Origin: Haliotis rufescens
Lineage: Eukaryota
Assembly: GCF_023055435.1 (NCBI RefSeq)
Contig: NW_025964001.1
Location: forward strand, 11,780,001-11,844,000
DNA length: 64,000 nucleotides
Reading direction: 5' to 3'
Made by a program: the position numbers and the translations under genes. The notes below the pieces were generated by a model. The model was not told the DNA's origin. It saw only the letters and a program-made list of their open reading frames with translations, and ran no database searches. Of the stretch, positions 5,450 to 64,000 are shown one piece after another. Position 1 is the first letter of the stretch. Every line of letters starts with the position of its first letter.

Positions 5450-5594
5450 NNNNNNNNNNNNNNNNNNNNNNNNNNNNNNNNNNNNNNNNNNNNNNNNNNN
5501 NNNNNNNNNNNNNNNNNNNNNNNNNNNNNNNNNNNNNNNNNNNNNNNNNNNNNNNNNNNNNNNNNNNNNNNNNNNNNNNNNNNNNNNNNNNNNN
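5450..5594. other. Assembly gap (N run)
   Basis: Run of N adjoining a SINE. Confidence 0.99.
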
Positions 5595-37177: not shown

Positions 37178-37310
37178 GTAGTACTGAAGAGGTAATTCTG
37201 AAGGGGGATCCCAGTAGGGACCGTACCCAGTGTCTCGTTGAAGGCTTAATGAATAGTGTGAGGGGGTGGATATTCGTAGATGGCGCCGTGAGGCTGCAAG
37301 TGTAGTATAC
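37178..37310 (-). pseudogene. Decayed fragment of the homeobox gene's last exon
   Basis: The sequence aligns by eye with 38209-38330 (e.g. gaatagtgt.agggg.tggata..cgtagatg.cg.cgt.aggctgca.gtgtagt) and carries indels. Confidence 0.7.
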
Positions 37311-42469: not shown

Positions 42470-43191
42470 AGCTTCCGTTAGTTGGTCTTTGTTTGATGGA
42501 CGGCTGGTATCTTTTGATGTGAATGGCTTCCGTTAGTTGGTCTTTGTTTGATGGACGGCTGGTATCTTTTGATGTGAATGGCTTCCGTTAGTTGGTCTTT
42601 GTTTGATGGACGGCTGGTATCTTTTGATGTGAATAGCTTCCGTTAGTTGGTCTTTGTTTGATGGACGGCTGGTATCTTTTGATGTGAATGGCTTCCGTTA
42701 GTTGGTCTTTGTTTGGTGGACGGCTGGTATCTTTTGATGTGAATGACTTCCGTTAGTTGGTCTTTGTTTGATGGACGGCTGGTCTCTTTTGATGTGAATG
42801 ACTTCCGTTAGTTGGTCTTTGTTTGATGGACGGCTGGTCTCTTTTGATGTGAATGACTTCCGTTAGTTGGTCTTTGTTTGATGGACGGCTGGTGTCTTTT
42901 GGTGTGAATAGCTTCCGTTAGTTGCTCTCTTTTAATGGACGGCTAATATCTTTTGATGTGAATAGCTTCCGTTAGTTGGTCTTTGTTTGATGAACGCCTG
43001 GTATCTTTTGATGTGAATAACTTCCGTTAGTTGGTCTTTGTGTGATGGACGGCTGATATCTCTTGATGAGGATAGCTTCCGTTAGTTGGTCTTTGTGTGA
43101 TGGACGGCTGGTATCTTTTGATGTGAATGGCTTCCGTAAGTTGGTCTTTGTTTGATGGACGGCTGTTATTTTTTTATGCGAATGGCTTCCG
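42470..43191. repeat. 55-bp minisatellite, ~13 copies
   Basis: Tandem unit gcttccgttagttggtctttgtttgatggacggctggtatcttttgatgtgaatg; the right-hand copies are more diverged. Confidence 0.95.
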
Positions 43192-44997
43192 TTTGTTTCA
43201 GGATCATGTTGACTTAGAATTTAGAGGCAAAGACACCGTATCTGGTGGCTTGATGTTGTTGTATGTGATCTGGACGGAGGAACTGGAGTCTTGTTGGACG
43301 GGTGATGTGGTGTTCAGCAACAACATCAACATATTATTTCACTCAAAAACGCAAAGCAGCGATACGTATTGTTTCTCCATAGATCGTTGGCTTTATGTCC
43401 TCTTTTCTAAGCCTCGAAATAAATCCAGTGATTTTTGGGATTTGTTTATAGTTGTTAGGGATTCAGCTCCGTTGAGATGCGATAGTTGGAATTGTAAATC
43501 AGTTGGTAAACACAAAGCGTATACTAATGTAGAAAAGTGTCATGATCATATTTGTTTGGTATAATTTTTGGAAAAAGACAAAACGACCTTGATTACAGAA
43601 CTAATGCCGAGACAGTTGCAAGATGTAAGTGAAGAGCATGGGTGGGACAGGTTCACCATGTCTGACAACGTTTTCACAAATAAAGTTTCCTTATCTTTGG
43701 TCACTGGGCGACAAACGTGGTACATGTTATGGAAGGACTTAAACAGTTGACCATCGACATTACTATCGCCACGAATCCAGACTCCCTTTAGTGTTGAAAA
43801 GTCTGATCAGTATCGAACACTTTTGAGAAGTCGAAAACATGGAAGTGATTATTGAGAAGTGATAGCACTTAATTTACGATATCCAGCATGGTCTTCATTG
43901 ACCGTAACTGAGTAGCTTCAAAGTGTTATTTGATGCCAAATGTATCATTCAAGCCTTGAAAACATAGCTACATTCATTGTTTTAGTTCTTACCTATATAC
44001 GATGGAACATATGTAACCACAATACTCTAAAATATGTGAGCTGAGCAAAGCAGGATATCTGTCGCAGTTGCAACACACATGTTTCGAAGAAGGTGAGGAT
44101 CTATATCTGTGAGGGTAGCTATGCTAAAAAATGATTTATACAATGATTTATATTTCATATCACACAACCTAAAGAATGATATAGCAAGTGTTACTTCATT
44201 TGGACCAAGAAAGATACCCATCAATTCATGCTTAACAACCCCTACATCATTTCATGCACATTTCATTGAGATTTCACATGTGACGTATGTTGTGACTTGG
44301 TTTGAGGATGTTACCTTCACAAGTGGTATTTTTGACAATTGACAATAAATGAATGACTGAGAATTGGATTTCTATATCTCAGCAAAGCAGGATATCTTTC
44401 GCAGTTGCAACACACGTTTCCATGGAGGTTAGCCCAGAAATGGGCTTCACACAATGTGGGCAATCGAACCCGGGTCTTCAGTGTGATGTGCGAACGTTTT
44501 AACCACGAGGCTACTCCATCGCCCCTATATCTGTGAGGCTAGCTTAGCTGACAATCCTTTATATTTCATATCACACAACCTAAAGAACGGTTAAACGTCA
44601 CAATAAAAGTTTCCTTCAAGCAGATTCATTTGAACTGTGAAGAGGTTTGTCTCTTAGTCCAACCAACATCCACCAATCATGTGTTCCAATCCAAGATTCG
44701 CCTGTTTAGGATCCTTTGTTTATCAGTAAGATATTTGTAATCGTGGTTTACATGAAAGTGGGAAAATGCGTGCTGCATAAGAACATGAAATGATAGTTTT
44801 CAGATAATGTTTATTATCTCAGAAACATTTACACAGTCGTCTTCAAATGACAGTTGCAATCCATAATGTAAACACAACAATATATACAATAATAGTAACA
44901 AAGCAGGCCCAAGATGAGTTCAACATTGGACTGCAGTGCATATTGCACAAATTACGCCCTCGTTCTTCATCTGACCACTAATACATTCCCGAAACTT

Positions 44998-46233
44998 CTA
45001 GACGCCTATCTGGGGAAAAGTCATCTGATCGCTTAGGAAGTTGAAGTGGGGTAGATAATTCTGGTAGTATGGAGTTTCGGGAGATCTGAAGTTGGACTGG
45101 TTGGAATACTCTGTCCACTGTTGCGGGCATGGTGTGACTTGGAAGGATGTTTCCGTCATCAGATGTGGGTAGTGGAGAGTATTCTGGGTAGGCCAAGTAC
45201 AGGATACTGCGTCACCGAGTGCGCTGTAGACGTTGTGTGATGATGGGTACATCAGGGGGTTGTAGACGGGGTCGTAGTCCGTCACTGAGGAGCAGCCGGG
45301 TCCAGTGCTGGGTAGGTAGTGGAGGCTGAAGAAGAGAATAGATTGTTGTTAGTCCGAGACAGACATGCTATTGTGTTGAAGCTAATAAGAGCCAAAATGC
45401 GCGCCTGTGTAACTAACTTGGTGTGTACTTACTTTGATTTGGGTTTGTCTTTCACGTCATCTTTCTTGGAAGTCGTTGGTGGTGTGAGCACGTGACACTC
45501 GTCCGTAGCCGTTACGTCACGTGACCGTGACGTTCCTTGTTGATACAGTTGCTGTCTCATCCAGTTCACGCGAGCACCTTTAGACTGACGCTTGAACTTG
45601 GAACGGCGGTTCTGGAACCAGATCTGTATGGCAGAAAGAGGTCATTATTATCGAGACATTTCATGAAATCAGGGTCTTTTATATGGGTTGAAAAGATTAT
45701 GAAATGAAATATACAACAATTCTTTAAGTCCAAACTATGTACCATATAAACTGAATAAAGCAGTAAAAGTTAGAATTTCCCTTCAGTACATTTCATGGGT
45801 CCTATGTACATTTAAAAGGACAAGAAAGAGGGTTTTATATCACTATGATATTGTGTATTGTGTGATCAATTATCTCTTTCGAGAACTTCTGTTAGGTGTA
45901 ATAAAGAGGATTTACTTACCGATAGTCTCTCTACGTCGATGTTGATGGTGTTGGAGAGATCCTCCAAGATGGAGCTGTCAGGATACTGAGAGGACACGAA
46001 TACCTTCTCCAGTTGCCTCAACTGTGGATATGGATAGCGGAGATGAAAACGTGTTAACTTTGTATTTCGATTTACTTTTGAAATAACAATAGTTTATGTT
46101 TTCTTCCTATTCACGTTTCGAGCAATTAAATGTTTACCTGACTAGCAGAGTACTTGATTCTGTTCCTTGCCGGAACGATTGTCTTGTTGACGGTACACTT
46201 GCTTGGCTTGGTTTCGGGGCTCTTCACTTTCAT
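44998..46233 (-). CDS. PRD-type homeobox gene, array copy 1 (238 aa)
   Basis: Exons 46233-46138, 46021-45920, 45623-45433 and 45325-44998 (717 nt, intact). Product: MKVKSPETKPSKCTVNKTIVPARNRIKYSASQ|LRQLEKVFVSSQYPDSSILEDLSNTINIDVERLS|IWFQNRRSKFKRQSKGARVNWMRQQLY...FPQIGV. Confidence 0.9.
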
Positions 46234-46337
46234 TATAGTGGGGTAATTGTATAGAATACTTTTAAAAGAGAAAATGCTCGAAATGTGAAGATAATCTCGG
46301 TGACAAGTCTTGCTGGTTTCGATTAGGGCAGCTCTAT

Positions 46338-46374
46338 GACTGATGACTCAAGGATGGAAGTTTTCGACTTTATA
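46338..46374 (-). promoter_or_regulatory. Putative core promoter of array copy 1 (repeated in each unit)
   Basis: TATAAAG starts at 46374 and Inr TCAGTC has its A at 46341. This is the same 33-nt spacing as in the older paralog. A TGACTCA (AP-1-like) site is at 46344-46350. Confidence 0.55.
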
Positions 46375-46626
46375 CCCGTACCATGACCATCGGGCTTCTT
46401 TTAAGTCAACCACCATACACCACCCACTCATTACTCCCACGTCTGTGTTGTTAATAATCAGGAATTCTTTCTTCATGTATAGCCGCCATGCTGTTTAAGT
46501 TGAAACATCTTGATTGTTTTCACAGCAATAAGAACTATATCTTTGTTTACCTAATTAAAACGGTAGCAGTCGTCGACGAGGTAGCGGTACATTAAAGTAG
46601 CCTCCACCAGGTGAGCGTGTACTCAC

Positions 46627-46682
46627 TTACCTGTCAAAACTTTACACCTACATCAAAGACGCCGCCTTACGTAGCACACCTG
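46627..46682. promoter_or_regulatory. Conserved upstream block with TCF/LEF site + GCCGCC helper (array; also at ~51012, ~55375, ~59726)
   Basis: CATCAAAG at 46651-46658, a 2-nt spacer, then GCCGCC at 46661-46666. Confidence 0.55.
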
Positions 46683-47509
46683 TGTGGACACTACGTTTAA
46701 ATGTCCATCTTGTTTTGTGGGACAATTTCATAAACAAACAGGGACAAAACGTTTACAAATCCTAGCGAGGAATCCTTATAGTGTATGGAAGGGCCAGGCA
46801 TTAACAATAACCGCCGTCACATAGCTGGAATATTGCTGAGTGCGGCGTTAAACAAAAAAAACCAAAAACATTAACCATACCGTAGTCTTCACAAGGATAA
46901 CTTATTTGTTATTGTGTGAAACAGTTATGCTCGTAATAAGCTTGAAACGCATATCCATTATATAATTGAACACCTTTGGAATAAGAGGATACAGAAAAAT
47001 CTCGATGATCATGTATTTGTTCAAAAGAAATAAGGCGTTTATATGTCGTGAGCCAAGAAAAATGGTTCCCAACTGTCTACATTTCACAACTTTTGAGGTA
47101 CACTCGAGCAAGCTCTTTCCACGATGATTTCAAAGAGTGTTCTTAGTTACGACATAAAGCTTTTAAAACGTTTTGTGGTAGACATGTGGATGACATTTCC
47201 AAATTTGACTCATCAGTGACCAAATGATGCTTGATACAGTTCCCTTTTTTAACTTGTTCCCTTGGTTTTTTTTCGGGTGAACAATTGACTTGGTTTTGCA
47301 TGTGTTTGTGACGGGGTGCAACCGGGAAAATAGCGGAGGCGGATACGCTCGCCTTTTCGCCAACATCTGGTATCATCACTACTTGATGTCGATTAATGGA
47401 AACAAACTCATGATATGGTCGGAATTATACAATCGAGTGTGTGTTTGACACAAATTCTTAATATGAATATGGAAAGTTTATTTTATTGTCTTTATCCGCC
47501 TCTCTTAAG

Positions 47510-47677
47510 TGAGTGAGTGAGTGAGTATGGTTTTACGCCGCTTTTAGCAATATTCCAGCAATATCACGGCGGGGGACACCAGAAATGGGCTTCACACATT
47601 GTACCCATGTCGGGAATCGAACCCGGGTCTTCGGCGTGACGAGCGAACGCTTTAACCACTGGGCTACCCGACCGCCC
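47510..47677 (-). mobile_element. SINE family A within the array unit (also ~51870-52038, 56233-56401, 60584-60752)
   Basis: Consensus-like copy with a 14-bp TSD ccgcctctcttaag, at the same site in every complete spacer. Confidence 0.92.
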
Positions 47678-49359
47678 GCCTCTCTTAAGAATTTTAGGTT
47701 GGGTAAAAACCTTGCAGTTTTCAAGTTACGTGTCCATCATAACCACCAATAACACGTAAAATTACTTTTCTCTTTGTAGCTATTTATATTTCACTTTATT
47801 AACTTCTAAATATTTTACTCTATGCTAACTGAGCGATTTCAAGATCACGCTCAGATTCTATATATTCCGACGTTAGGGATATTATCATTTGATCGAAATA
47901 TTAGAAGAAGTTGGCTGACACTAAAGTGTAGAGATGTTTTTGGACTTAACATTTAGTGAAGACTCACAACCCACATGAAACTGAAAAGTCAGCAACTATA
48001 TTTACAATTTTTAGAGGGATAAGGTGCAAGTATTTCATGGGACGTTTGATGTTCCTCACCTGTATATTTAGCGCCTCACAATATGATAATGAAATACACA
48101 TTACGTACCTAAACTGACACATAAATAAATTGATATATAACATTTGGAAGATGCATATGGTATTTTGACAGAAAATCGGATCCTTAATGATGGTTATGAA
48201 GAATTTAATGTCAGTATTGATTTGGCAAACTTTTCTAAAGCTGTTGAAACTATTGCCATGTACTTTTTCGTGGTAATAATCCAAATATCTGTAAATGACA
48301 CCTTATACTGTGCTTGCTGTACCATTACTTGCTTGGCTTTTCTGCAATACAAGGGTCACCCTATAGGTAAATTTCCCGTTTATCAGTCTGTATCTCTCAC
48401 CATATGAAATGATGAATGGTTTGAACTAGTGGTATATAATGTATGTACAGTACTGATTGACGTAATTGGTTTGTCCGACACGCCTTATATATATGTTTTA
48501 CGCTCCCAGACGGTAACTTGTTATTCAGCCAATGGTATCCAAAGGAAGCGCCCGATAATGCGATAACGTCAGCATGAAGATTTGGCTCATATACGCAACA
48601 TGGCGATTACAAGTGCATTCGAAAGTTGTTGATAATACCTTACAGGCATAGATCGGGTTATCACATTGACCGTAACTGAGCAGCTTCAAAGTTTAACATG
48701 AGTGTTATTTGATGCCAAATGTATCATTCAAGCCTTGAAAACATAGCTTCATTTAATGTTTTAGTTATTACCTATATACGATGGAACATATGTAACCACA
48801 ACACTCTTAAATATGTGACCTGAGCAAAGCAGGATATCTGTCGCAGTTGCAACACACATGTTTCGAAGAAGTTGAGGATCTATATCTGTGAGGGTGGCTT
48901 TGCTAAAAATGATTTATACGATGCTTTATATTTCATATCACACAACCTAAAGACGGTTAAATTTCACAATAAAAGTTTCCTTCAAGCAGATTCATTTGAA
49001 CTGTGAAGAGGTTTGTCTCTTAGTCCAACCAACATCCACCAATCATGTGTTCCAATCCAAGATTCGCCTGTTTAGGATCCTTTGTTAGTAAGATATTTGT
49101 AATCGTGGTTTACATGAAAGTGGGAAAATGCGTGCTGCATAAGAACATGAAATGATAGTTTTCAGATAATGTTTATTATCTCAGAAACATTTACACAGTC
49201 CTCTTCAAATGACAGTTGCAATCCATAACGTAAACACAACAATATATACATTAATAGTAACAAAGCAGGCCCAAGATGAGTTCAACATTGGACTGCAGTG
49301 CATATTGCACAAATTACGCCCTCGTTCTTCATCTGACCACTAATACATTCCCGAAAGTT

Positions 49360-50594
49360 CTAGACGCCTATCTGGGGAAATGTCATCTGATCGCTTAGGA
49401 AGTTGAAGTGGGGTAGATAATTCTGGTAGTATGGAGTTCCGGGAGAGCTGAAGTTGGACTGGTTGGAATACTCTGTCCACTGTTGCGGGCATGGTGTGAC
49501 TTGGAAGGATGTTTCCGTCATCAGATGTGGGTAGTGGAGAGTATTCTGGGTAGGCCGTGTACAGGATACTGCGTCACTGAGTGCGCTGTAGACGTTGTGT
49601 GATGATGGGTACATCAGGGGGTTGTAGACGGGGTCGTAGTCCGTCACTGAGGAGCAGCCGGGTCCAGTGCTGGGTAGGTAGTGGAGGCTGAAGAAGAGAA
49701 GAGATTGTTGTTAGTCCGAGACAGACATGCCATTGTGTTGAAGCTAATAAGAGCCCACTACGCGCCTGTGTAACTAACTTGGTGTGTACTTACTTTGATT
49801 TGGGTTTGTCTTTCACGTCATCTTTCTTGGAAGTCGTTGGTGGTGTGAGCACGTGACACTCGTCCGTAGCCGTTACGTCACGTGACCGTGACGTTCCTTG
49901 TTGATACAGTTGCTGTCTCATCCAGTTCACGTGAGCACCTTTAGACTGACGCTTGAACTTGGAACGGCGGTTCTGGAACCAGATCTGTATGGCAGAAAGA
50001 GGTCATTATTATCGAGACATTTCATGAAATCAGGGTCTTTTATATGGGTTGAAAAGATTATGAAATGAAATATACAACAATTCTTTAAGTCCAAACTATG
50101 TACCATATAAACTGAATAAAGCAGTAAAAGTTAGAATTTCCCTTCAGTACATTTCATGGGTCCTATGTACATTTAAAAGGACAAGAAAGAGAGTTTTATA
50201 TCACTATGATATTGTGTATTGTGTGATCAATTATCTCTCTCGAGAACTTCTGTTAGGTGTAATAAAGAGGATTTACTTACCGATAGTCTCTCTACGTCGA
50301 TGTTGATGGTGTTGGAGAGATCCTCCAAGATGGAGCTGTCAGGATACTGAGAGGACACGAATACCTTCTCCAGTTGCCTCAACTGTGGATATGGATAGCG
50401 GAGATGAAAACGTGTTAACTTTGTATTTCGATTTACTTTTGAAATAACAATAGTTTATGTTTTCTTCCTATTCACGTTTCGAGCAATTAAATGTTTACCT
50501 GACTAGCAGAGTACTTGATTCTGTTCCTTGCCGGAACGATTGTCTTGTTGACGGTACACTTGCTTGGCTTGGTTTCGGGGCTCTTCACTTTCAT
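49360..50594 (-). CDS. PRD-type homeobox gene, array copy 2
   Basis: Exons 50594-50499, 50382-50281, 49984-49794 and 49687-49360. Frame and splice sites are intact. Confidence 0.9.
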
Positions 50595-53500
50595 TATAGT
50601 GGGGTAATTGTATAGAATACTTTTAAAAGAGAAAATGCTCGAACTGTGAAGATGATCTCGGTGACAAGTCTTGCTGGTTTCGATTAGGGCAGCTCTATGA
50701 CTGATGACTCAAGGATGGAAGTTTTCGACTTTATACCCGTACCATGACCATCGGGCTTCTTTTAAGTCAACCACCATACACCACCCACTCATTACTCCCA
50801 CGTCTGTGTTGTTAATAATCAGGAATTCTTTCTTCATGTATAGCCGCCATGCTGTTTAAGTTGAAACATCTTGATTGTTTTCACAGCAATAAGAACTATA
50901 TCTTTGTTTACCTAATTAAAACGGTAGCAGTCGTCGACGAGGTAGCGGTACATTAAAGTAGCCTCCACCAGGTGAGCGTGTACTCACTTACCTGTCAAAA
51001 CTTTACACCTACATCAAAGACGCCGCCTTACGTAGCACACCTGTGTGGACACTACGTTTAAATGTCCATCTTGTTTTGTGGGACAATTTCATAAACAAAC
51101 AGGGACAAAACGTTTACAAATCCTAGCGAGGAATCCTTATAGTGTATGGAAGGGCCAGGCATTAACAATAACCGCCGTCATATAGCTGGAATATTGCTGA
51201 GTGCGGCGTTAAACAAAAAACCCCAAAAACATTAACAATACCGTAGTCTTCACAAGGATAACTTATTTGTTATTGTGTGAAACAGTTATGCTCGTAATAA
51301 GCTTGAAACGCATTTCCATTATAAAATTGAACACCTTTGGAATAAGAGGATACAGAAAAATCTCGATGATCATGTATTTGTTCAAAAGAAATAAGGCGTT
51401 TATATGTCGTGAGCCAAGAAAAATGGTTCCCAACTGTCTACATTTCACAACTTTTGAGGTACACTCGAGCAAGCTCTTTCCACGGTGATTTCAAAGAGTG
51501 TTCTTAGTTACAACATAAAGCTTTTAAAACGTTTTGTGGTAGACATGTGGATGACATTTCCAAATTTGACTCATCAGTGACCAAATGATGCTTGATACAG
51601 TTCCCTTTTTTAACTTGTTCCCTTGTTTTTTTTTCGGGTGAACAATTGACTTGGTTTTGCATGTGTTTGTGACGGGGTGCAACCGGGAAAATAGCGGAGG
51701 CGGATACGCTCGCCTTTTCGCCAACAGCTGGTATTATCACTACTTGATGGCGATTAATGGAAACAAACTCATGATATGGTCGGAATTATACAATCGAGTG
51801 TTTGTTTGACACAAATTCTTAATATGAATATGGAAAGTTTATTTCATTGTCTTTATCCGCCTCTCTTAAGTGAGTGAGTGAGTGAGTATGGTTTTACGCC
51901 GCTTTTAGCAATATTCCAGCAATATCACGGCGGGGGACACCAGAAATGGGCTTCACACATTGTACCCATGTCGGGAATCGAACCCGGGTCTTCGGCGTGA
52001 CGAGCGAACGCTTTAACCACTAGGCTACCCGACCGCCCGCCTCTCTTAAGAATTTTAGGTTTGGTAAAATCCTTGCAATTTTCAAGTTACGTGTCCATCA
52101 TAACCACCAATAACACGTAAAATTACTTTTCTCTTTGTAGCTATTTATATTTCACTTTATTAACTTCTAAATATTTTACTCTATGCTAACTGAGCGATTT
52201 CAAGATCACGCTCAGATTCTATATATTCCGACGTTAGGGATATTATCATTTGATCGAAATATTAGAAGAAGTTGGCTGACACTAAAGTGTAGAGATGTTT
52301 TTGGAGTTAACATTTAGTGAAGACTCACAACCCACATGAAACTGAAAAGTCAGCAACTATATTTACAATTTATAGAGGGATAAGGTGCAAGTATTTCATG
52401 GGACGTTTGATGTTCCTCACCTGTATATTTAGCGCCTCACAATATGATAATGAAATACACATTACGTACCTAAACTGACACATAAATAAATTGATATATA
52501 ACATTTGGAAGATGCATATGGTATTTTGACAGAAAATCGGATCCTAAATGATGGTTATGAAGAATTTAATGTCAGTATTGATTTGGCAAACTTTTCTAAA
52601 GCTGTTGAAACTATTGCCATGTACTTTTTCGTGGTAATAATCCAAATATCTGTAAATGACACCTTATACTGTGATTGCTGTACCATTACTTGCTTGGCTT
52701 TTCTGCAATACAAGGGTCACCCTGTAGGTAAATTTCCCGTTTATCAGTCTGTATCTCTCACCATATGAAATAATGAATGGTTTGAACTAGTGGTATATAA
52801 TGTATGTACAGTACTGATTGACGTAATTGGTTTGTCCGACACGCCTTATATATATGTTTTACGCTCCCAGACGGTAACTTGTTATTAAGCCAATGGTATC
52901 CAAAGGAAGCGCCCGATAATCCGATAACGTCAGCATGAAGGTTTGGCTCATATACGCAACATGGCGATTACAAGTGCATTCGAAAGTTGTTGATAATACC
53001 TTACAGGCATAGATCGGGTTATCACATTGACCGTAACTGAGCAGCTTCAAAGTTTAACATGAGTGTTATTTGATGCCAAATGTATCATTCAAGCCTTGAA
53101 AACATAGCTTCATTTAATGTTTTAGTTATTACCTATATACGATGGAACATATGTAACCACAACACTCTTAAATATGTGACCTGAGCAAAGCAGGATATCT
53201 GTCGCAGTTGCAACACACATGTTTCGAAGAAGGTGAGGATCTATATCTGTGAGGGTGGCTTTGCTAAAAAAATGATTTATACAATGCTTTATATTTCATA
53301 TCACACAACCTAAAGAAGGTTAAATTTCACAATAAAAGTTTCCTTCAAGCAGATTCATTTGAACTGTGAAGAGGTTTGTCTCTAAGTCCAACCAACATCC
53401 ACCAATCATGTGTTCGAATCCAAGATTCGCCTGTTTAGGATCCTTTGTTAGTAAGATATTTGTAATCGTGGTTTACATGAAAGTGGGAAAATGCGTGCTG

Positions 53501-53722
53501 CATAAGAACATGAAATGATAGTTTTCAGATAATGTTTATTATCTCAGAAACATTTACACAGTCCTCTTCAAATGACAGTTGCAATCCATAACGTAAACAC
53601 AACAATATATACATTAATAGTAACAAAGCAGGCCCAAGATGAGTTCAACATTGGACTGCAGTGCATATTGCACAAATTACGCCCTCGTTCTTCATCTGAC
53701 CACTAATACATTCCCGAAAGTT

Positions 53723-54957
53723 CTAGACGCCTATCTGGGGAAATGTCATCTGATCGCTTAGGAAGTTGAAGTGGGGTAGATAATTCTGGTAGTATGGAGT
53801 TCCGGGAGAGCTGAAGTTGGACTGGTTGGAATACTCTGTCCACTGTTGCGGGCATGGTGTGACTTGGAAGGATGTTTCTGTCATCAGATGTGGGTAGTGG
53901 AGAGTATTCTGGGTAGGCCGTGTACAGGATACTGCGTCACTGAGTGCGCTGTAGACGTTGTGTGATGATGGGTACATCAGGGGGTTGTAGACGGGGTCGT
54001 AGTCCGTCACTGAGGAGCAGCCGGGTCCAGTGCTGGGTAGGTAGTGGAGGCTGAAGAAGAGAAGAGATTGTTGTTAGTCCGAGACAGACATGCCATTGTG
54101 TTGAAGCTAATAACAGCCCACTACGCGCCTGTGTAACTAACTTGGTGTGTACTTACTTTGATTTGGGTTTGTCTTTCACGTCATCTTTCTTGGAAGTCGT
54201 TGGTGGTGTGAGCACGTGACACTCGTCCGTAGCCGTTACGTCACGTGACCGTGACGTTCCTTGTTGATACAGTTGCTGTCTCATCCAGTTCACGTGAGCA
54301 CCTTTAGACTGACGCTTGAACTTGGAACGGCGGTTCTGGAACCAGATCTGTATGGCAGAAAGAGGTCATTATTATCGAGACATTTCATGAAATCAGGGTC
54401 TTTTATATGGGTTGAAAAGATTATGAAATGAAATATACAACAATTCTTTAAGTCCAAACTATGTACCATATAAACTGAATAAAGCAGTAAAAGTTAGAAT
54501 TTCCCTTCAGTACATTTCATGGGTCCTATGTACATTTAAAAGGACAAGAAAGAGAGTTTTATATCACTATGATATTGTGTATTGTGTGATCAATTATCTC
54601 TTTCGAGAACTTCTGTTAGGTGTAATAAAGAGGATTTACTTACCGATAGTCTCTCTACGTCGATGTTGATGGTGTTGGAGAGATCCTCCAAGATGGAGCT
54701 GTCAGGATACTGAGAGGACACGAATACCTTCTCCAGTTGCCTCAACTGTGGATATGGATAGCGGAGATGAAAACGTGTTAACTTTGTATTTCGATTTACT
54801 TTTGAAATAACAATAGTTTATGTTTTCTTCCTATTCACGTTTCGAGCAATTAAATGTTTACCTTACTAGCAGAGTACTTGATTCTGTTCCTTGCCGGAAC
54901 GATTGTCTTGTTGACGGTACACTTGCTTGGCTTGGTTTCGGGGCTCTTCACTTTCAT
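53723..54957 (-). CDS. PRD-type homeobox gene, array copy 3 (homeodomain Q12K variant)
   Basis: Exons 54957-54862, 54745-54644, 54347-54157 and 54050-53723. The last codon of exon 1 is AAG instead of CAG (position 54864). Confidence 0.88.
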
Positions 54958-57900
54958 TATAGTGTGGTAATTGTATAGAATACTTTTAAAAGAGAAAATG
55001 CTCGAAATGTGAAGATGATCTCGGTGACGAGTCTTGCTGGTTTCGATTAGGGCAGCTCTATGACTGATGACTCAAGGATGGAAGTTTTCGACTTTATACC
55101 CGTACCATGACCATCGGGCTTCTTTTAAGTCAACCACCATACACCACCCACTCATTGCTCCCACGTCTGTGTTGTTAATAATCAGGAATTCTTTCTTCAT
55201 GTATAGCCGCCATGCTGTTTAAGTTGAAACATCTTGATTGTTTTCACAGCAATAAGAACTATATCTTTGTTTATCTAATTAAAACGGTAGCAGTCGTCGA
55301 CGAGGTAGCGGTACATTAAAGTAGCCTCCACCAGGTGAGCGTGTACTCACTTACCTGTCAAAACTTTACACCTACATCAAAGACGCCGCCTTACGTAGCA
55401 CACCTGTGTGGACACTACGTTTAAATGTCCATCTTGTTTTGTGGGACAATTTCATAAACAAACAGGGACAAAACGTTTACAAATCCTAGCGAGGAATCCT
55501 TATAGTGTATGGAAGGGCCAGGCATTAACAATAACCGCCGTCATATAGCTGGAATATTGCTGAGTGCGGCGTTAAACAAAAACACCCAAAAACATTAACA
55601 ATACCGTAGTCTTCACAAGGATAACTTATTTGTTATTGTGTGAAACAGTTATGCTCGTAATAAGCTTGAAACGCATTTCCATTATATAATTGAACACCTT
55701 TGGAATAAGAGGATACAGAAAAATCTCGATGATCATGTATTTGTTCAAAAGAAATAAGGCGTTTATATGTCGTGAGCCAAGAAAAATGGTTCCCAACTGT
55801 CTACATTTCACAACTTTTGAGGTACACTCGAGCAAGCTCTTTCCACGGTGATTTCAAAGAGTGTTCTTAGTTACGACATAAAGCTTTTAAAACGTTTTGT
55901 GGTAGACATGTGGATGACATTTCCAAATTTGACTCATCAGTGACCAAATGATGCTTGATACAGTTCCCTTTTTTAACTTGTTCCCTTGGTTTTTTTTCGG
56001 GTGAACAATTGACTTGGTTTTGCATGTGTTTGTGACGGGGTGCAACCGGGAAAATAGCGGAGGCGGATACGCTCGCCTTTTCGCCAACAGCTGGTATTAT
56101 CACTACTTGATGGCGATTAATGGAAACAAACTCATGATATGGTCGGAATTATACAATCGAGTGTTTGTTTGACACAAATTCTTAATATGAATATGGAAAG
56201 TTTATTTCATTGTCTTTATCCGCCTCTCTTAAGTGAGTGAGTGAGTGAGTATGGTTTTACGCCGCTTTTAGCAATATTCCAGCAATATCACGGCGGGGGA
56301 CACCAGAAATGGGCTTCACACATTGTACCCATGTCGGGAATCGAACCCGGGTCTTCGGCGTGACGAGCGAACGCTTTAACCACTAGGCTACCCGACCGCC
56401 CGCCTCTCTTAAGAATTTTAGGTTTGGTAAAAACCTTGCAATTTTCAAGTTACGTGTCCATCATAACCACCAATAACACGTAAAATTACTTTTCTCTTTG
56501 TAGCTATTTATATTTCACTTTATTAACTTCTAAATATTTTACTCTATGGTAACTGAGCGATTTCAAGATCACGCTCAGATTCTATATATTCCGACGTTAG
56601 GGATATTATCATTTGATCGAAATATTAGAAGAAGTTGGCTGACACTAAAGTGTAGAGATGTTTTTGGACTTAACATTTAGTGAAGACTCACAACCCACAT
56701 GAAACTGAAAAGTCAGCAACTATATTTACAATTTATAGAGGGATAAGGTGCATGTATTTCATGGGACGTTTGATGTTCCTCACCTGTATATTTAGCGCCT
56801 CACAATATGTTAATGAAATACACATTACGTACCTGAACTGACACATAAATAAATTGATATATAACATTTGGAAGATGCATATGGTATTTTGACAGAAAAT
56901 CGGATCCTAAATGATGGTTATGAAGAATCTAATGTCAGTATTGATTTGGCAAACTTTTCTAAAGCTGTTGAAACTATTGCCATGCACTTTTTCGTGGTAA
57001 TAATCCAAATATCTGTAAATGACACCTTATACTGTGATTGCTGTACCATTACTTGCTTGGCTTTTCTGCAATACAAGGGTCACCCTGTAGGTAAATTTCC
57101 CGTTTATCAGTCTGTATCTCTCACCATATGAAATAATAAATGGTTTGAACTAGTGGTATATAATGTATGTACAGTACTGATTGACGTAATTGGTTTGTCC
57201 GACACGCCTTATATATATGTTTTACGCTCCCAGACGGTAACTTGTTATTAAGCCAATGGTATCCAAAGGAAGCGCCCGATAATCCGATAACGTCAGCATG
57301 AAGGTTTGGCTCATATACGCAACATGGCGATTACAAGTGCATTCGAAAGTTGTTGATAATACCTTACAGGCATAGATCGGGTTATCACATTGACCGTAAC
57401 TGAGCAGCTTCAAAGTTTAACATGAGTGTTATTTGATGCCAAATGTATCATTCAAGCCTTGAAAACATAGCTTCATTTAATGTTTTAGTTATTACCTATA
57501 TACGATGGAACATATGTAACCACAACACTCTTAAATATGTGACCTGAGCAAAGCAGGATATCTATCGCAGTTGCAACACACATGTTTCGAAGAAGGTGAG
57601 GATCTATATCTGTGAGGGTGGCTTTGCTAAAAATGATTTATACAATGCTTTATATTTCATATCACACAACCTAAAGACGGTTAAATTTCACAATAAAAGT
57701 TTCCTTCAAGCAGATTCATTTGAACTGTGAAGAGGTTTGTCTCTTAGTCCAACCAACATCCACCAATCATGTGTTCGAATCCAAGATTCGCCTGTTTAGG
57801 ATCCTTTGTTAGTAAGATATTTGTAATCGTGGTTTACATGAAAGTGGGAAAATGCGTGCTGCATAAGAACATGAAATGATAGTTTTCAGATAATGTTTAT

Positions 57901-58082
57901 TATCTCAGAAACATTTACACAGTCCTCTTCAAATGACAGTTGCAATCCATAACGTAAACACAACAATATATACATTAATAGTAACAAAGCAGGCCCAAGA
58001 TGAGTTCAACATTGGACTGCAGTGCATATTGCACAAATTACGCCCTCGTTCTTCATCTGACCACTAATACATTCCGAAAGTT

Positions 58083-59317
58083 CTAGACGCCTATCTGGGG
58101 AAATGTCATCTGATCGCTTAGGAAGTTGAAGTGGGGTAGATAATTCTGGTAGTATGGAGTTCCGGGAGAGCTGAAGTTGGACTGGTTGGAATACTCTGTC
58201 CACTGTTGCGGGCATGGTGTGACTTGGAAGGATGTTTCCGTCATCAGATGTGGGTAGTGGAGAGTATTCTGGGTAGGCCGTGTACAGGATACTGCGTCAC
58301 TGAGTGCGCTGTAGACGTTGTGTGATGATGGGTACATCAGGGGGTTGTAGACGGGGTCGTAGTCCGTCACTGAGGAGCAGCCGGGTCCAGTGCTGGGTAG
58401 GTAGTGGAGGCTGAAGAAGAGAAGAGATTGTTGTTAGTCCGAGACAGACATGCCATTGTGTTGAAGCTAATAAGAGCCCACTACGCGCCTGTGTAACTAA
58501 CTTGGTGTGTACTTACTTTGATTTGGGTTTGTCTTTCACGTCATCTTTCTTGGAAGTCGTTGGAGGTGTGAGCACGTGACACTCGTCCGTAGCCGTTACG
58601 TCACGTGACCGTGACGTTCCTTGTTGATACAGTTGCTGTCTCATCCAGTTCACGTGAGCACCTTTAGACTGACGCTTGAACTTGGAACGGCGGTTCTGGA
58701 ACCAGATCTGTATGGCAGAAAGAGGTCATTATTATCGAGACATTTCATGAAATCAGGGTCTTTTATATGGGTTGAAAAGATTATGAAATGAAATATACAA
58801 CAATTCTTTAAGTCCAAACTATGTACCATATAAACTGAATAAAGCAGTAAAAGTTAGAATTTCCCTTCAGTACATTTCATGGGTCCTATGTACATTTAAA
58901 AGGACAAGAAAGAGAGTTTTATATCACTATGATATTGTGTATTGTGTGATCAATTATCTCTTTCGAGAACTTCTGTTAGGTGTAATAAAGAGGATTTACT
59001 TACCGATAGTCTCTCTACGTCGATGTTGATGGTGTTGGAGAGATCCTCCAAGATGGAGCTGTCAGGATACTGAGAGGACACGAATACCTTCTCCAGTTGC
59101 CTCAACTGTGGATATGGATAGCGGAGATGAAAACGTGTTAACTTTGTATTTCGATTTACTTTTGAAATAACAATAGTTTATGTTTTCTTCCTATTCACGT
59201 TTCGAGCAATTAAATGTTTACCTGACTAGCAGAGTACTTGATTCTGTTCCTTGCCGGAACGATTGTCTTGTTGACGGTACACTTGCTTGGCTTGGTTTCG
59301 GGGCTCTTCACTTTCAT
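58083..59317 (-). CDS. PRD-type homeobox gene, array copy 4
   Basis: Exons 59317-59222, 59105-59004, 58707-58517 and 58410-58083; intact. Confidence 0.9.
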
Positions 59318-62300
59318 TATAGTGTGGTAATTGTATAGAATACTTTTAAAAGAGAAAATGCTCGAAATGTGAAGATGATCTCGGTGACGAGTCTTGCTGG
59401 TTTCGATTAGGGCAGCTCTATGACTGATGACTCAAGGATGGAAGTTTTCGACTTTATACCCGTACCATGACCATCGGGCTTCTTTTAAGTCAACCACCAT
59501 ACTCATTACTCCCACGTCTGTGTTGTTAATAATCAGGAATTCTTTCTTCATGTATAGCCGCCATGCTGTTTAAGTTGAAACATCTTGATTGTTTTCACAG
59601 CAATAAGAACTATATCTTTGTTTATCTAATTAAAACGGTAGCAGTCGTCGACGAGGTAGCGGTACATTAAAGTAGCCTCCACCAGGTGAGCGTGTACTCA
59701 CTTACCTGTCAAAACTTTACACCTACATCAAAGACGCCGCCTTACGTAGCACACCTGTGTGGACACTACGTTTAAATGTCCATCTTGTTTTGTGGGACAA
59801 TTTCATAAACAAACAGGGACAAAACGTTTACAAATCCTAGCGAGGAATCCTTATAGTGTATGGAAGGGCCAGGCATTAACAATAACCGCCGTCATATAGC
59901 TGGAATATTGCTGAGTGCGGCGTTAAACAAAAACACCCAAAAACATTAACAATACCGTAGTCTTCACAAGGATAACTTATTTGTTATTGTGTGAAACAGT
60001 TATGCTCGTAATAAGCTTGAAACGCATTTCCATTATATAATTGAACACCTTTGGAATAAGAGGATACAGAAAAATCTCGATGATCATGTATTTGTTCAAA
60101 AGAAATAAGGCGTTTATATGTCGTGAGCCAAGAAAAATGGTTCCCAACTGTCTACATTTCACAACTTTTGAGGTACACTCGAGCAAGCTCTTTCCACGGT
60201 GATTTCAAAGAGTGTTCTTAGTTACGACATAAAGCTTTTAAAACGTTTTGTGGTAGACATGTGGATGACATTTCCAAATTTGACTCATCAGTGACCAAAT
60301 GATGCTTGATACAGTTCCCTTTTTTAACTTGTTCCCTTGGTTTTTTTTCGGGTGAACAATTGACTTGGTTTTGCATGTGTTTGTGACGGGGTGCAACCGG
60401 GAAAATAGCGGAGGCGGATACGCTCGCCTTTTCGCCAACAGCTGGTATTATCACTACTTGATGGCGATTAATGGAAACAAACTCATGATATGGTCGGAAT
60501 TATACAATCGAGTGTTTGTTTGACACAAATTCTTAATATGAATATGGAAAGTTTATTTCATTGTCTTTATCCGCCTCTCTTAAGTGAGTGAGTGAGTGAG
60601 TATGGTTTTACGCCGCTTTTAGCAATATTCCAGCAATATCACGGCGGGGGACACCAGAAATGGGCTTCACACATTGTACCCATGTCGGGAATCGAACCCG
60701 GGTCTTCGGCGTGACGAGCGAACGCTTTAACCACTAGGCTACCCGACCGCCCGCCTCTCTTAAGAATTTTAGGTTTGGTAAAATCCTTGCAATTTTCAAG
60801 TTACGTGTCCATCATAACCACCAATAACACGTAAAATTACTTTTCTCTTTGTAGCTATTTATATTTCACTTTATTAACTTCTAAATATTTTACTCTATGC
60901 TAACTGAGCGATTTCAAGATCACGCTCAGATTCTATATATTCCGACGTTAGGGATATTATCATTTGATCGAAATATTAGAAGAAGTTGGCTGACACTAAA
61001 GTGTAGAGATGTTTTTGGACTTAACATTTAGTGAAGACTCACAACCCACATGAAACTGAAAAGTCAGCAACTATGTTTACAATTTATAGAGGGATAAGGT
61101 GCAAGTATTTCATGGGACGTTTGATGTTCCTCACCTGTATATTTAGCGCCTCACAATATGATAATGAAATACACATTACGTACCTGAACTGACACATAAA
61201 TAAATTGATATATAACATTTGGAAGATGCATATGGTATTTTGACAGAAAATCGGATCCTAAATGATGGTTATGAAGAATTTAATGTCAGTATTGATTTGG
61301 CAAACTTTTCTAAAGCTGTTGAAACTATTGCCATGTACTTTTTCGTGGTAATAATCCAAATATCTGTAAATGACACCTTATACTGTGATTGCTGTACCAT
61401 TACTTGCTTGGCTTTTCTGCAATACAAGGGTCACCCTGTAGGTAAATTTCCCGTTTATCAGTCTGTATCTCTCACCATATGAAATAATGAATGGTTTGAA
61501 CTAGTGGTATATAATGTATGTACAGTACTGATTGACGTAATTGGTTTGTCCGACACGCCTTATATGTATGTTTTACGCTCCCAGACGGTAACTTGTTATT
61601 AAGCCAATGGTATCCAAAGGAAGCGCCCGATAATCCGATAACGTCAGCATGAAGGTTTGGCTCATATACGCAACATGGCGATTACAAGTGCATTCGAAAG
61701 TTGTTGATAATACCTTACAGGCATAGATCGGGTTATCACATTGACCGTAACTGAGCAGCTTCAAAGTTTAACATGAGTGTTATTTGATGCCAAATGTATC
61801 ATTCAAGCCTTGAAAACATAGCTTCATTTAATGTTTTAGTTATTACCTATATACGATGGAACATATGTAACCACAACACTCTTAAATATGTGACCTGAGC
61901 AAAGCAGGATATCTGTCGCAGTTGCAACACACATGTTTCGAAGAAGGTGAGGATCTATATCTGTGAGGGTGGCTTTGCTAAAAAAATGATTTATACAATG
62001 CTTTATATTTCATATCACACAACCTAAAGACGGTTAAATTTCACAATAAAAGTTTCCTTCAAGCAGATTCATTTGAACTGTGAAGAGGTTTGTCTCTTAG
62101 TCCAACCAACATCCACCAATCATGTGTTCGAATCCAAGATTCGCCTGTTTAGGATCCTTTGTTAGTAAGATATTTGTAATCGTGGTTTACATGAAAGTGG
62201 GAAAATGCGTGCTGCATAAGAACATGAAATGATAGTTTTCAGATAATGTTTATTATCTCAGAAACATTTACACAGTCCTCTTCAAATGACAGTTGCAATC

Positions 62301-62436
62301 CATAACGTAAACACAACAATATATACATTAATAGTAACAAATCAGGCCCAAGATGAGTTCAACATTGGACTGCAGTGCATATTGCACAAATTACGCCCTC
62401 GTTCTTCATCTGACCACTAATACATTCCCGAAAGTT

Positions 62437-63671
62437 CTAGACGCCTATCTGGGGAAATGTCATCTGATCGCTTAGGAAGTTGAAGTGGGGTAGATAATTC
62501 TGGTAGTATGGAGTTCCGGGAGAGCTGAAGTTGGACTGGTTGGAATACTCTGTCCACTGTTGCGGGCATGGTGTGACTTGGAAGGATGTTTCTGTCATCA
62601 GATGTGGGTAGTGGAGAGTATTCTGGGTAGGCCGTGTACAGGATACTGCGTCACTGAGTGCGCTGTAGACGTTGTGTGATGATGGGTACATCAGGGGGTT
62701 GTAGACGGGGTCGTAGTCCGTCACTGAGGAGCAGCCGGGTCCAGTGCTGGGTAGGTAGTGGAGGCTGAAGAAGAGAAGAGATTGTTGTTAGTCCGAGACA
62801 GACATGCCATTGTGTTGAAGCTAATAACAGCCCACTACGCGCCTGTGTAACTAACTTGGTGTGTACTTACTTTGATTTGGGTTTGTCTTTCACGTCATCT
62901 TTCTTGGAAGTCGTTGGTGGTGTGAGCACGTGACACTCGTCCGTAGCCGTTACGTCACGTGACCGTGACGTTCCTTGTTGATACAGTTGCTGTCTCATCC
63001 AGTTCACGTGAGCACCTTTAGACTGACGCTTGAACTTGGAACGGCGGTTCTGGAACCAGATCTGTATGGCAGAAAGAGGTCATTATTATAGAGACATTTC
63101 ATGAAATCAGGGTCTTTTATATGGGTTGAAAAGATTATGAAATGAAATATACAACAATTCTTTAAGTCCAAACTATGTACCATATAAACTGAATAAAGCA
63201 GTAAAAGTTAGAATTTCCCTTCAGTACATTTCATGGGTCCTATGTACATTTAAAAGGACAAGAAAGAGAGTTTTATATCACTATGATATTGTGTATTGTG
63301 TGATCAATTATCTCTTTCGAGAACTTCTGTTAGGTGTAATAAAGAGGATTTACTTACCGATAGTCTCTCTACGTCGATGTTGATGGTGTTGGAGAGATCC
63401 TCCAAGATGGAGCTGTCAGGATACTGAGAGGACACGAATACCTTCTCCAGTTGCCTCAACTGTGGATATGAATAGCGGAGATGAAAACGTGTTAAATTTG
63501 TATTTCGATTTACTTTTGAAATAACAATAGTTTATGTTTTCTTCCTATTCACGTTTCGAGCAATTAAATGTTTACCTGACTAGCAGAGTATTTGATTCTA
63601 TTCCTTGCCGGAACGATTGTCTTGTTGACGGTACACTTGCTTGGCTTGGTTTCGGGGCTCTTCACTTTCAT
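62437..63671 (-). CDS. PRD-type homeobox gene, array copy 5
   Basis: Exons 63671-63576, 63459-63358, 63061-62871 and 62764-62437; intact, with two synonymous changes in exon 1. Confidence 0.9.
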
Positions 63672-64000
63672 TATAGTGTGGTAATTGTATAGAATACTTT
63701 TAAAAGAGAAAATGCTCGAAATGTGAAGATGATCTCGGTGACAAGTCTTGCTGGTTTCGATTAGGGCAGCTCTATGACTGATGACTCAAGGATGGAAGTT
63801 TTCGACTTTATACCCGTACCATGACCATCGGGCTTCTTTTAAGTCAACCACCATACACCACCCACTCATTACTCCCACGTCTGTGTTGTTAATAATCAGG
63901 AATTCTTTCTTCATGTATAGCCGCCATGCTGTTTAAGTTGAAACATCTTGATTGTTTTCACAGCAATAAGAACTATATCTTTGTTTACCTAATTAAAACG

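What the first reader, a model, noticed from the sequence alone, without database searches (positions are those of the whole stretch)
43896..64000. Homeobox-encoding macrosatellite: at least 5 near-identical, intact PRD-type genes in 4.36-kb tandem units
Seen: each unit carries a complete 4-exon, 238-aa Q50 homeobox gene with its own promoter motifs. All five visible copies keep frame and splice sites, and the array runs off the window. The ORF track does not reveal it because the homeodomain is split over three exons. Known: homeobox genes are usually single-copy, and tandem amplification is typical of transiently expressed early-embryo or germline PRD-class genes (DUX4 in D4Z4, mouse Dux, Obox, Rhox). 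Inference: this is an independent invertebrate example of a dosage-amplified early-development homeobox array. Unlike DUX4, it is built from an intron-containing gene rather than a retrogene.
Basis: partly seen in the sequence, partly recalled or inferred. Interest (0 to 1): 0.92.

Follow-up and report, generated by a model that had tools for sequence, protein, structure and literature searches.

The report
Abalone tandem array of homeobox genes
Red abalone carries a real 51-kb head-to-tail array of twelve near-identical copies of a small mollusc-type homeobox gene whose oyster relative is switched on from egg to blastula, but the genes and their family are already catalogued and expression in abalone could not be checked here.

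Summary
The window is Haliotis rufescens, contig C223. From window 43896 a 4.36-kb unit repeats head to tail. Five complete gene copies lie in the window. The assembly holds 12 copies over 50.8 kb. Each unit carries, on the minus strand, a TATAAA box, a 4-exon 238-aa Q50 homeobox gene and an AATAAA signal. The homeodomain has introns at positions 12/13 and 46/47. Eleven copies are intact; copy 11, outside the window, has a 1-bp frameshift.

My exon model equals RefSeq proteins exactly, so the genes are already annotated, under inconsistent automatic names. The homeodomain belongs to the published lophotrochozoan clade PRD-V. Its oyster member Cgi_PRD4 is expressed from egg to blastula.

H. cracherodii, H. 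asinina and H. rubra also have several copies, and these cluster by species, which indicates concerted evolution. A SINE with the same 13-bp target duplication sits in units 1-10, while unit 11 keeps the empty site. Units 1-10 therefore descend from one unit.

Coding diversity among copies (0.55%) is close to non-coding diversity, so intact frames alone do not show selection.

The dosage-for-early-embryo reading is plausible but untested. Verdict: a new member of a known kind, of moderate interest.

The parts
43896..64000 (-). Window part of the 4.36-kb tandem array. It holds a partial leftmost spacer plus units 1-5. The array runs on to G000:C223:11874734, giving 12 gene copies over 50.8 kb.
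44998..46233 (-). Copy 1, ATG to stop. It is intact at 238 aa and is the most diverged copy in the window (5 amino-acid changes against copy 2).
49360..50594 (-). Copy 2, ATG to stop, used as the reference copy. Its protein is identical to RefSeq P0027 (XP_046343471.2 and others).
50499..50594 (-). Copy 2 exon 1: start codon, the N-terminal MKVK motif and homeodomain positions 1-12.
50281..50382 (-). Copy 2 exon 2: homeodomain positions 13-46 (helices 1 and 2). It ends at the PRD-class 46/47 intron.
   Evidence: Pfam PF00046 positions 13-42, 21.8 bits.
49794..49984 (-). Copy 2 exon 3: homeodomain positions 47-60 (recognition helix with Q50) plus a conserved post-homeodomain block. A second CAG 12 nt downstream, which would start the exon at 49972, would remove residues IWFQ if it were used as acceptor.
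   Evidence: PF00046 positions 46-57; all H. asinina RefSeq models lack IWFQ.
49360..49687 (-). Copy 2 exon 4 (entered in phase 2): Ser/Pro/Tyr-rich tail ending in the FPQIG motif, then the stop codon.
   Evidence: 81% identical to the tail of H. rubra P0001.
53723..54957 (-). Copy 3, intact. It carries Q32K and equals RefSeq P0006.
58083..59317 (-). Copy 4, intact. It differs from copy 2 by one synonymous change only.
62437..63671 (-). Copy 5, intact. It differs from copy 2 by synonymous changes only.
50730..50735 (-). TATAAA box 141 nt upstream of the ATG of copy 2. The same motif sits at the same offset in all 12 copies; in the window the first bases are at 46374, 50735, 55098, 59458 and 63812.
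   Evidence: This is a motif only; its use is not shown.
49172..49177 (-). AATAAA 183 nt downstream of the stop of copy 2. It is present at 182-183 nt in all 12 copies.
51858..52050 (-). tRNA-derived SINE (body 51871-52037) flanked by a 13-bp target-site duplication. The same insertion with the same duplication is in units 1-10, and unit 11 keeps the empty site. In the window the flanking duplications start at 47497/47677, 51858/52038, 56221/56401 and 60572/60752.
38050..39548 (-). Single-copy older paralogue B. It has the same 4-exon plan, 236 aa, and equals RefSeq P0007. Its exon 2 is 97% identical in DNA to the array, against 74-79% for exons 1 and 3 (exon 4 gave no DNA match).
42382..43307 (+). 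55-bp minisatellite of about 13-17 units, lying between paralogue B and the left edge of the array.

Best explanation
SHOWN. This is a real 50.8-kb head-to-tail array of a PRD-V family, paired-like Q50 homeobox gene on a 67.9-Mb contig (C223) of red abalone. It has 12 copies, 11 of them intact. Every unit has the parts of a complete gene: TATAAA, 4 exons, stop codon and AATAAA. The copies are kept alike by unequal crossing-over or gene conversion. Interior units are 99-100% alike and edge units are older. A 3-unit block is duplicated. Units 1-10 all descend from one unit that had acquired a SINE. Other Haliotis species have their own homogenised multi-copy sets.

INFERRED. The product is a sequence-specific DNA-binding transcription factor. 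Amplification supplies a large transcript dose in a short window of very early development (egg to blastula). This rests on analogy with the oyster family member PRD4 and with mammalian Dux, Obox and Leutx arrays.
For: Structure:
- Spacing and identity of units.
- 12 copies in the assembly.
- Frames and splice sites.
- The model equals RefSeq P0027.
- TATA and poly(A) motifs in all units.

Homogenisation:
- Units 3-4-5 match units 6-7-8 at 99.9-100%, and units 1, 11 and 12 are the most diverged.
- The shared SINE plus target duplication in units 1-10, with the empty site in unit 11.
- Copies cluster by species in the protein tree: asinina 100/99, rubra 97/94, rufescens 77/70. The eight labels need the minimum of 7 changes.
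- Two amino-acid differences are fixed between all catalogued rufescens copies and all cracherodii copies.

Multi-copy state in four species:
- cracherodii XP_071080775-783.
- asinina, accessions between XP_067682592 and XP_067682612, including a fused two-copy model.
- rubra, 3 proteins.

Functional lineage:
- dN/dS against paralogue B is about 0.29.
- The helix-3 part of the homeodomain shows 0 non-synonymous and 6 synonymous changes.
- The family is conserved across gastropods and bivalves.

Timing:
- PRD-V membership.
- Oyster PRD4 expressed from egg to blastula (PMC5322547).
Against:
- Coding diversity among copies (0.55%) is about the same as intergenic diversity (0.65%) and not far below intron diversity (0.92%). 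The array is too young or too homogenised for intact frames to show selection on each copy.
- One copy is already frameshifted, and decayed relics of the family flank the array.
- The oyster comparison spans the gastropod-bivalve split and rests on one sentence in one paper.
- No protein from run assemblies (source 'lgn') appeared among the close matches. This is a weak hint that the gene is not abundantly transcribed in commonly sequenced tissues.
- The copy number could be off by the 3-unit block if that block is an assembly duplication.
Confidence: 0.6

Rival explanations
1. Birth-and-death flux without a dosage function. One functional PRD-V gene sits in a recombination-prone region and is repeatedly amplified and lost. 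The extra copies are young, effectively neutral passengers that look intact only because they have had no time to decay.
For: - Copies differ by about 0.6%, and coding, intron and intergenic diversity are nearly equal.
- Among the distinct coding variants, 11 are non-synonymous and 8 synonymous, with most changes in the tail.
- Copy 11 is frameshifted.
- Decayed fragments lie left of the array (37192-37304) and right of it.
- A 55-bp minisatellite and SINEs border or fill the units.
Against: - Four Haliotis species each keep many intact copies. That is hard to get by chance if extra copies were neutral.
- Only one non-synonymous change (Q32K in copy 3) falls inside the homeodomain across the copies.
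- Every unit keeps the same TATA and poly(A) motifs.
Confidence: 0.25
2. The array is real, but the gene acts at another stage, late larval or adult and tissue-specific, rather than in cleavage. Amplification then serves something other than an early burst of transcript.
For: - In oyster most novel PRD genes (PRD1, 5, 6, 7, 8) are expressed after the trochophore. That includes PRD5, the second oyster member of Clade V.
- Abalone has three old paralogue lineages, A, B and C, which could have split the expression domains between them.
Against: - The helix-3 signature and post-homeodomain block of the array gene match Cgi_PRD4, not Cgi_PRD5, which has AKFKR.
- PRD4 is the early-expressed one.
Confidence: 0.12
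3. Assembly artefact. A single-copy or few-copy gene was inflated by mis-assembly of long reads or of the two haplotypes.
For: Units 3-4-5 and 6-7-8 are 99.9-100% identical and have the same unit lengths (4360, 4354, 4360 bp). This is what a duplicated block or a haplotype join would look like.
Against: - Units carry distinct private variants, and divergence grades towards both edges.
- Independent assemblies of H. cracherodii and H. asinina carry 9 and at least 7 distinct annotated proteins, each on one contig.
- A fused two-copy model in H. asinina shows that copies are adjacent there.
Confidence: 0.03

Closest known systems
Lophotrochozoan PRD Clade V (PRD-V): oyster Cgi_PRD4, Lottia PRD-V A1/A2 (Paps et al. 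2015, PMC5322547; Barton-Owen et al. 2018, PMC6118893)
   Same: - The recognition-helix signature WFQNRRSKFKRQS is the same, as are the (I/T)KY(S/T) arm and the QYPD(S/T) motif.
- The Lottia protein found by my search (P0020) has the homeodomain listed as Lg_PRD-V_A1.
- Oyster relatives score 195-211 bits against the family profile.
- This is the family the abalone gene belongs to.
   Different: In Lottia and Patella the genes are pairs, and oyster has one PRD4. A 12-copy near-identical array has not been described for this family in the papers I could search.
DUX4 in the human D4Z4 macrosatellite
   Same: - A kilobase-scale unit (3.3 kb against 4.36 kb here) repeated head to tail, each unit with a PRD-class homeobox open reading frame.
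- Solved DUX4 homeodomains are among the best matches, 48-49 bits.
   Different: - DUX4 has two homeodomains and is an intronless retrogene. Here there is one homeodomain split over three exons.
- From established knowledge, only the last D4Z4 unit reaches a poly(A) signal. Here every unit has its own AATAAA.
- The abalone gene is not a member of the DUX family.
Mouse Obox cluster and the rabbit LEUTX tandem array (ETCHbox genes; PMC8208926, PMC5787275)
   Same: Intron-containing paired-like homeobox genes amplified in tandem, with gene conversion among copies. They are expressed around genome activation in mammals.
   Different: They are unrelated in descent: ETCHbox genes derive from CRX in eutherians. 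The abalone copies are far more alike (99-100%) than most Obox genes. Expression in abalone is unknown.
Spiralian-specific TALE (SPILE) homeobox expansions (PMC8524836 and the references in it)
   Same: Lineage-restricted homeobox genes of molluscs, duplicated in tandem and used in early blastomere specification.
   Different: They belong to the TALE class with its three-residue loop insertion, not the PRD class. They are diverged paralogues rather than a homogenised array.

Membership tests
Homeodomain (Pfam PF00046) | 60-residue three-helix domain with W48, F49, N51, R53 and the L16/F20 core. | tested here: met
   - Exon 2 matches profile positions 13-42 (21.8 bits) and exon 3 matches positions 46-57 (14.5 bits).
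- The identical full-length RefSeq proteins carry PF00046.
- The key residues were read directly.
PRD class / paired-like | Intron between homeodomain positions 46 and 47. | tested here: met
   Exon 2 ends after position 46 with donor GTAAGT, and exon 3 starts at I47 after an AG.
PRD class / paired-like | Homeodomain closest to PRD-class members rather than to ANTP or other classes. | tested here: met
   The 25 best solved-structure matches are all PRD class: PRRX2, DUX4, HESX1, PHOX2B, Paired, ALX4, Aristaless, CRX, PAX6, PITX2, GSC, OTX2 and PAX3. They rank ahead of the NK, Bar and Hox types.
PRD class / paired-like | Accessory paired, OAR or octapeptide domains. These occur in many members and are not required. 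| tested here: not met
   Pfam finds no family in exon 1 or exon 4. This is consistent with a paired-like gene that has no paired box.
PRD-V clade (Paps 2015; Barton-Owen 2018) | Homeodomain grouping with Cgi_PRD4 and Lottia PRD-V A1/A2. | tested here: met
   - The helix-3 string is shared and P0020 is identical to Lg_PRD-V_A1.
- The profile search separates the family (116 bits or more, molluscs only) from generic PRD homeodomains (84 bits or less).
- A full tree against HomeoDB families was not built.
Lopx family (Barton-Owen 2018) | Homeodomain with YPN at positions 25-27 and KIWFQNRRRKD in helix 3. | tested here: not met
   The abalone gene has YPD and SIWFQNRRSKFKR. The Lopx sequences in the paper's supplement differ. 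The 'ceh-37' name on the Patella relative is an automatic label.
Macrosatellite (D4Z4-like) | Kilobase-scale unit in a long head-to-tail array with high identity between units. | tested here: met
   4.36-kb unit, about 11.65 units, interior identity 99-100%.
Macrosatellite (D4Z4-like) | Copy-number polymorphism between individuals. | not testable with these tools
Different counts of annotated proteins in other species are only suggestive.
DUX family | Two homeodomains in one intronless open reading frame. | tested here: not met
   There is one homeodomain and three introns.

The most novel reading that the evidence does not exclude
The array is an ancient, genus-wide homeobox macrosatellite kept by concerted evolution. 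It works as a spiralian counterpart of Dux/Obox: a burst of a PRD-V factor from about a dozen autonomous units at or before zygotic genome activation. A second layer would come from an alternative acceptor 12 nt inside exon 3. That acceptor removes IWFQ (homeodomain 47-50) and would give a form that cannot bind DNA. This is the form annotated for every H. asinina copy.
Probability: 0.15. Interest if true: 0.8.

Novelty: new member of a known kind. Interest (0 to 1): 0.55.

Why it matters
Regulators of the earliest steps of spiral-cleaving embryos are poorly known, and lineage-restricted homeobox genes are leading candidates. A dozen self-contained, near-identical copies of a PRD-V gene is the genomic signature seen for mammalian early-embryo factors, and related abalone species keep several copies too. 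That makes this a concrete, testable candidate in an aquaculture species whose embryos are easy to obtain. The shared SINE with an empty site in one unit also gives an unusually clean marker for how such arrays turn over. The find is still incremental. The genes are in RefSeq, the family is named, and tandem amplification of early homeobox genes is a known pattern.

Tried and rejected
Unit boundaries, SINE state and the exon-3 acceptor in H. cracherodii and H. asinina could not be examined. Cross-species work is at protein level only.
- The exon-4 search in the clustered protein collection found no candidate of 60-189 aa, so no transcript-derived fragments were recovered.
- Paired-type palindromic sites (TAAT, three bases, ATTA): 5 in the window against 3.2 expected, and none inside the array. 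There is no sign of auto-regulatory dimer sites.
- ARAGORN finds no tRNA in the SINE. Its tRNA-like head was read by eye.
- Literature searches for the helix-3 string, for abalone with the RefSeq names, and for PRD-V or PRD4 found nothing beyond Paps 2015 and Barton-Owen 2018.
- Lopx membership was considered because a Patella relative is auto-named ceh-37. It was rejected on sequence.
- The joined exon model was never sent to a search tool. Exons were searched one by one by reference. Whole-protein searches used RefSeq proteins returned by the tools (P0001, P0027, alignment A1). Joining was done only inside scripts, to count length and to compare with P0027 and P0007.
Full report
**What is there**

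A direct-repeat search of window 40000-64000 gives families of 4-5 copies with start-to-start spacings of 4351-4363 bp. Tandem Repeats Finder, limited to periods up to 500, sees only a 55-bp minisatellite at 42471-43197.

Reading the minus strand of one unit shows a four-exon gene. In copy 2 the exons are:
- Exon 1, 50499-50594: ATG, 32 codons, donor GTAAAC.
- Exon 2, 50281-50382: 34 codons, donor GTAAGT.
- Exon 3, 49794-49984: ends in phase 2, donor GTAAGT.
- Exon 4, 49360-49687: ends in a stop codon.

Together they make 717 nt and 238 aa with no internal stop. The homeodomain is split 12 + 34 + 14 residues over exons 1-3. It has R3, R5, Y8, L16, F20, YPD at 25-27, W48, F49, Q50, N51 and R53. 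The second intron lies exactly between positions 46 and 47, the PRD-class position. Pfam sees the homeodomain in pieces: exon 2 matches profile positions 13-42 at 21.8 bits, and exon 3 matches positions 46-57 at 14.5 bits.

**Whose genome it is, and whether the gene is known**

An HMMER search with exon 4 alone against 1.8 billion representative proteins gave one strong hit. It is a 236-aa Haliotis rubra protein (P0001) whose sequence crosses the three exon junctions exactly as in my model.

Searching with that protein returned Haliotis rufescens proteins on a contig of 67,865,795 bp, which is the length of the window's contig C223. My copy-2 model is identical to RefSeq P0027. The neighbouring paralogue model is identical to P0007.

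So the window is red abalone, and NCBI's pipeline has already annotated these genes. The automatic names are inconsistent: 'OTX1 B-like', 'Pax-6-like'.

The joined model itself was not sent to any search. Exons were searched by reference, and whole-protein searches used proteins that the tools returned.

**Extent and state of the array**

In the whole assembly the gene region matches 12 times on C223, from 11824938 to 11874249, and nowhere else at high identity.

With the next 50 kb fetched, blastn of the four exons places 12 copies. Eleven have a 717-nt frame, an ATG, GT donors and AG acceptors. Copy 11, which is outside the window, has a T inserted in a TT run of exon 2. That shifts the frame inside the homeodomain.

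The array runs from window 43896 to 11874734 in contig coordinates. That is 50.8 kb, about 11.65 units.

Every copy has TATAAA 141 nt before the ATG and AATAAA 182-183 nt after the stop. Unlike D4Z4, each unit therefore has the motifs of a complete transcription unit. Their use is not shown.

**How the copies relate**

- Units 1-10 are 98.7-100% identical.
- Unit 11 is about 97.5% identical to the others.
- Unit 12 keeps only about 650-700 bp upstream of its ATG before the array ends.
- Units 3-4-5 and 6-7-8 share private variants and unit lengths and are 99.9-100% identical. This is a 13-kb higher-order duplication, or possibly an assembly duplication.

The 3.1-kb spacer holds a 167-bp tRNA-derived SINE that is very abundant in the genome. 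The search found 5640 first-look candidates, and the scored copies are 96-99% identical. In units 1-10 the SINE is flanked by the same 13-bp duplication. Unit 11 has a single copy of that 13-mer and no SINE, which is the empty site. Units 1-10 therefore descend from one SINE-bearing unit, and homogenisation or expansion followed a recent retroposition.

The pattern of old edges and a young interior is what unequal crossing-over produces.

**Is there selection?**

Among units 1-10, pairwise diversity is 0.55% in coding sequence, 0.92% in introns and 0.65% between genes.

Older comparisons are more informative.
- A single-copy paralogue B at 38050-39548 has the same four exons.
- A third paralogue C on contig C594 matches all four exons in the same order.
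- Against B, overall dN/dS is about 0.29.
- In the helix-3 part of the homeodomain there are 0 non-synonymous and 6 synonymous differences.

The family is conserved across gastropods and bivalves. Invariant blocks lie in and after the homeodomain: the recognition helix, a WMR block, HVL and SNLHY. The lineage is therefore functional.

**Other species**

The 90%-identity clusters hold:
- 7 distinct H. cracherodii proteins (accessions XP_071080775-783), with the B orthologue next in number.
- 7 distinct H. asinina proteins, with accessions between XP_067682592 and XP_067682612. One is a fused two-copy model.
- 3 H. rubra proteins, two of them on a 23-kb contig.

In a maximum-likelihood tree the array proteins group by species: asinina 100/99, rubra 97/94, rufescens 77/70 and cracherodii 42/52. 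The labels need the minimum possible number of changes. Two residues, P197Q and L221I, separate all catalogued rufescens copies from all cracherodii copies.

The simplest reading is an array older than these species that evolves in concert.

**Which family**

- The best solved-structure matches are all PRD-class homeodomains, and none stands out.
- A profile of 16 relatives finds only molluscs at 116 bits or more: Haliotis, Patella, Lottia, Gigantopelta, scallops, unionids, pearl oyster, mussels, oysters, Solemya, clams. Scores then drop to 84 bits or less for generic PRD genes.
- In the supplementary alignment of Paps et al. 2015, the helix-3 ending SKFKR occurs in Cgi_PRD4 and two Lottia genes, all listed under 'PRD Clade V'.
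- In the supplement of Barton-Owen et al. 2018 the same sequences are labelled PRD-V. Lg_PRD-V_A1 has the homeodomain of my Lottia hit P0020. The Lopx family, which pipelines also call ceh-37, is clearly different.

The abalone gene is therefore a PRD-V member. This answers the separate note that the homeodomain could not be assigned.

**How it probably works**

Shown: a DNA-binding-competent Q50 paired-like homeodomain protein is encoded about a dozen times in self-contained units.

Inferred: the array exists to deliver a high dose quickly. Paps et al. report that the oyster genes PRD2 and PRD4 are expressed at the earliest stages, egg to blastula. Amplified paired-like genes in mammals (Dux, Obox, rabbit LEUTX; PMC8208926) act at that time.

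No transcript-derived protein turned up in the protein collection. I put the early-embryo dosage reading at roughly even odds. The main rival is neutral birth-and-death turnover in a recombination-prone spot. It is supported by the near-equal diversity of coding and non-coding sequence, the frameshifted copy, and decayed family fragments on both sides of the array.

**Verdict**

The find is a new member of a known kind: tandemly amplified, lineage-restricted paired-like homeobox genes. The genes are already annotated and the family already named, but the library searched holds no description of the array. Interest is moderate.

Noticed in passing
window 39215-39316 against 50281-50382 (and every array copy): Exon 2 of paralogue B is 97% identical in DNA to the array. 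Synonymous difference is 0.086 there against 0.69 in the rest of the gene (Fisher p = 1.5e-7). The flanking introns are unrelated beyond the splice consensus, and the last codons of exon 1 and the first 17 nt of exon 3 are also nearly identical. The tract is contiguous in the mRNA but not in the DNA. That suggests conversion through a spliced copy, or constraint on the RNA sequence.
   Followed up: partly
H. asinina RefSeq proteins P0005, P0031-P0036; equivalent site at window 49972-49984: Every H. asinina model lacks IWFQ (homeodomain 47-50). This is exactly what use of the CAG 12 nt inside exon 3 as acceptor would give. That CAG is also present in red abalone. It is either an annotation choice, a mutated acceptor in H. 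asinina, or real alternative splicing that removes the DNA-contacting core.
   Followed up: no
G000:C246:2001684-2029705 (L017 = 2000001-2010000): A second homeobox cluster: at least 10 homeodomain matches within 28 kb on both strands. The three read in L017 are uninterrupted 220-225-aa frames with two LIM-like cysteine/histidine-rich regions (read by eye, not scanned against Pfam) plus a homeodomain. It looks like an intronless LIM-homeobox expansion.
   Followed up: partly
G000:C79:22420640-22442938; G000:C556:32063686-32070268 and 32127840-32154646: Further evenly spaced homeodomain hits with identical scores: three at about 11.1-kb spacing on C79 and two groups on C556. Tandem homeobox duplication is not rare in this genome.
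   Followed up: no
window 42382-43307: A 55-bp minisatellite of about 13-17 units at 92% match, with strong GC and AT skew. It lies between paralogue B and the left edge of the array.
   Followed up: no
window 37192-37304; beyond the window at G000:C223:11887005-11887560, 11890033-11890107 and 11892496-11892592 (plus strand): Decayed fragments of the same gene family lie on both sides of the array. One is an exon-4-like piece with a stop. Another is a 214-bp tandem repeat derived from exon 3. A third is a broken helix-3 piece.
   Followed up: partly
window 44177-44550: The leftmost partial unit carries about 374 extra bases. They include a more diverged copy (81%) of the same SINE family, inserted independently of the SINE shared by units 1-10.
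   Followed up: partly
window 5450-5594: A run of 145 N, either an assembly gap or a masked stretch. It was left untouched.
   Followed up: no
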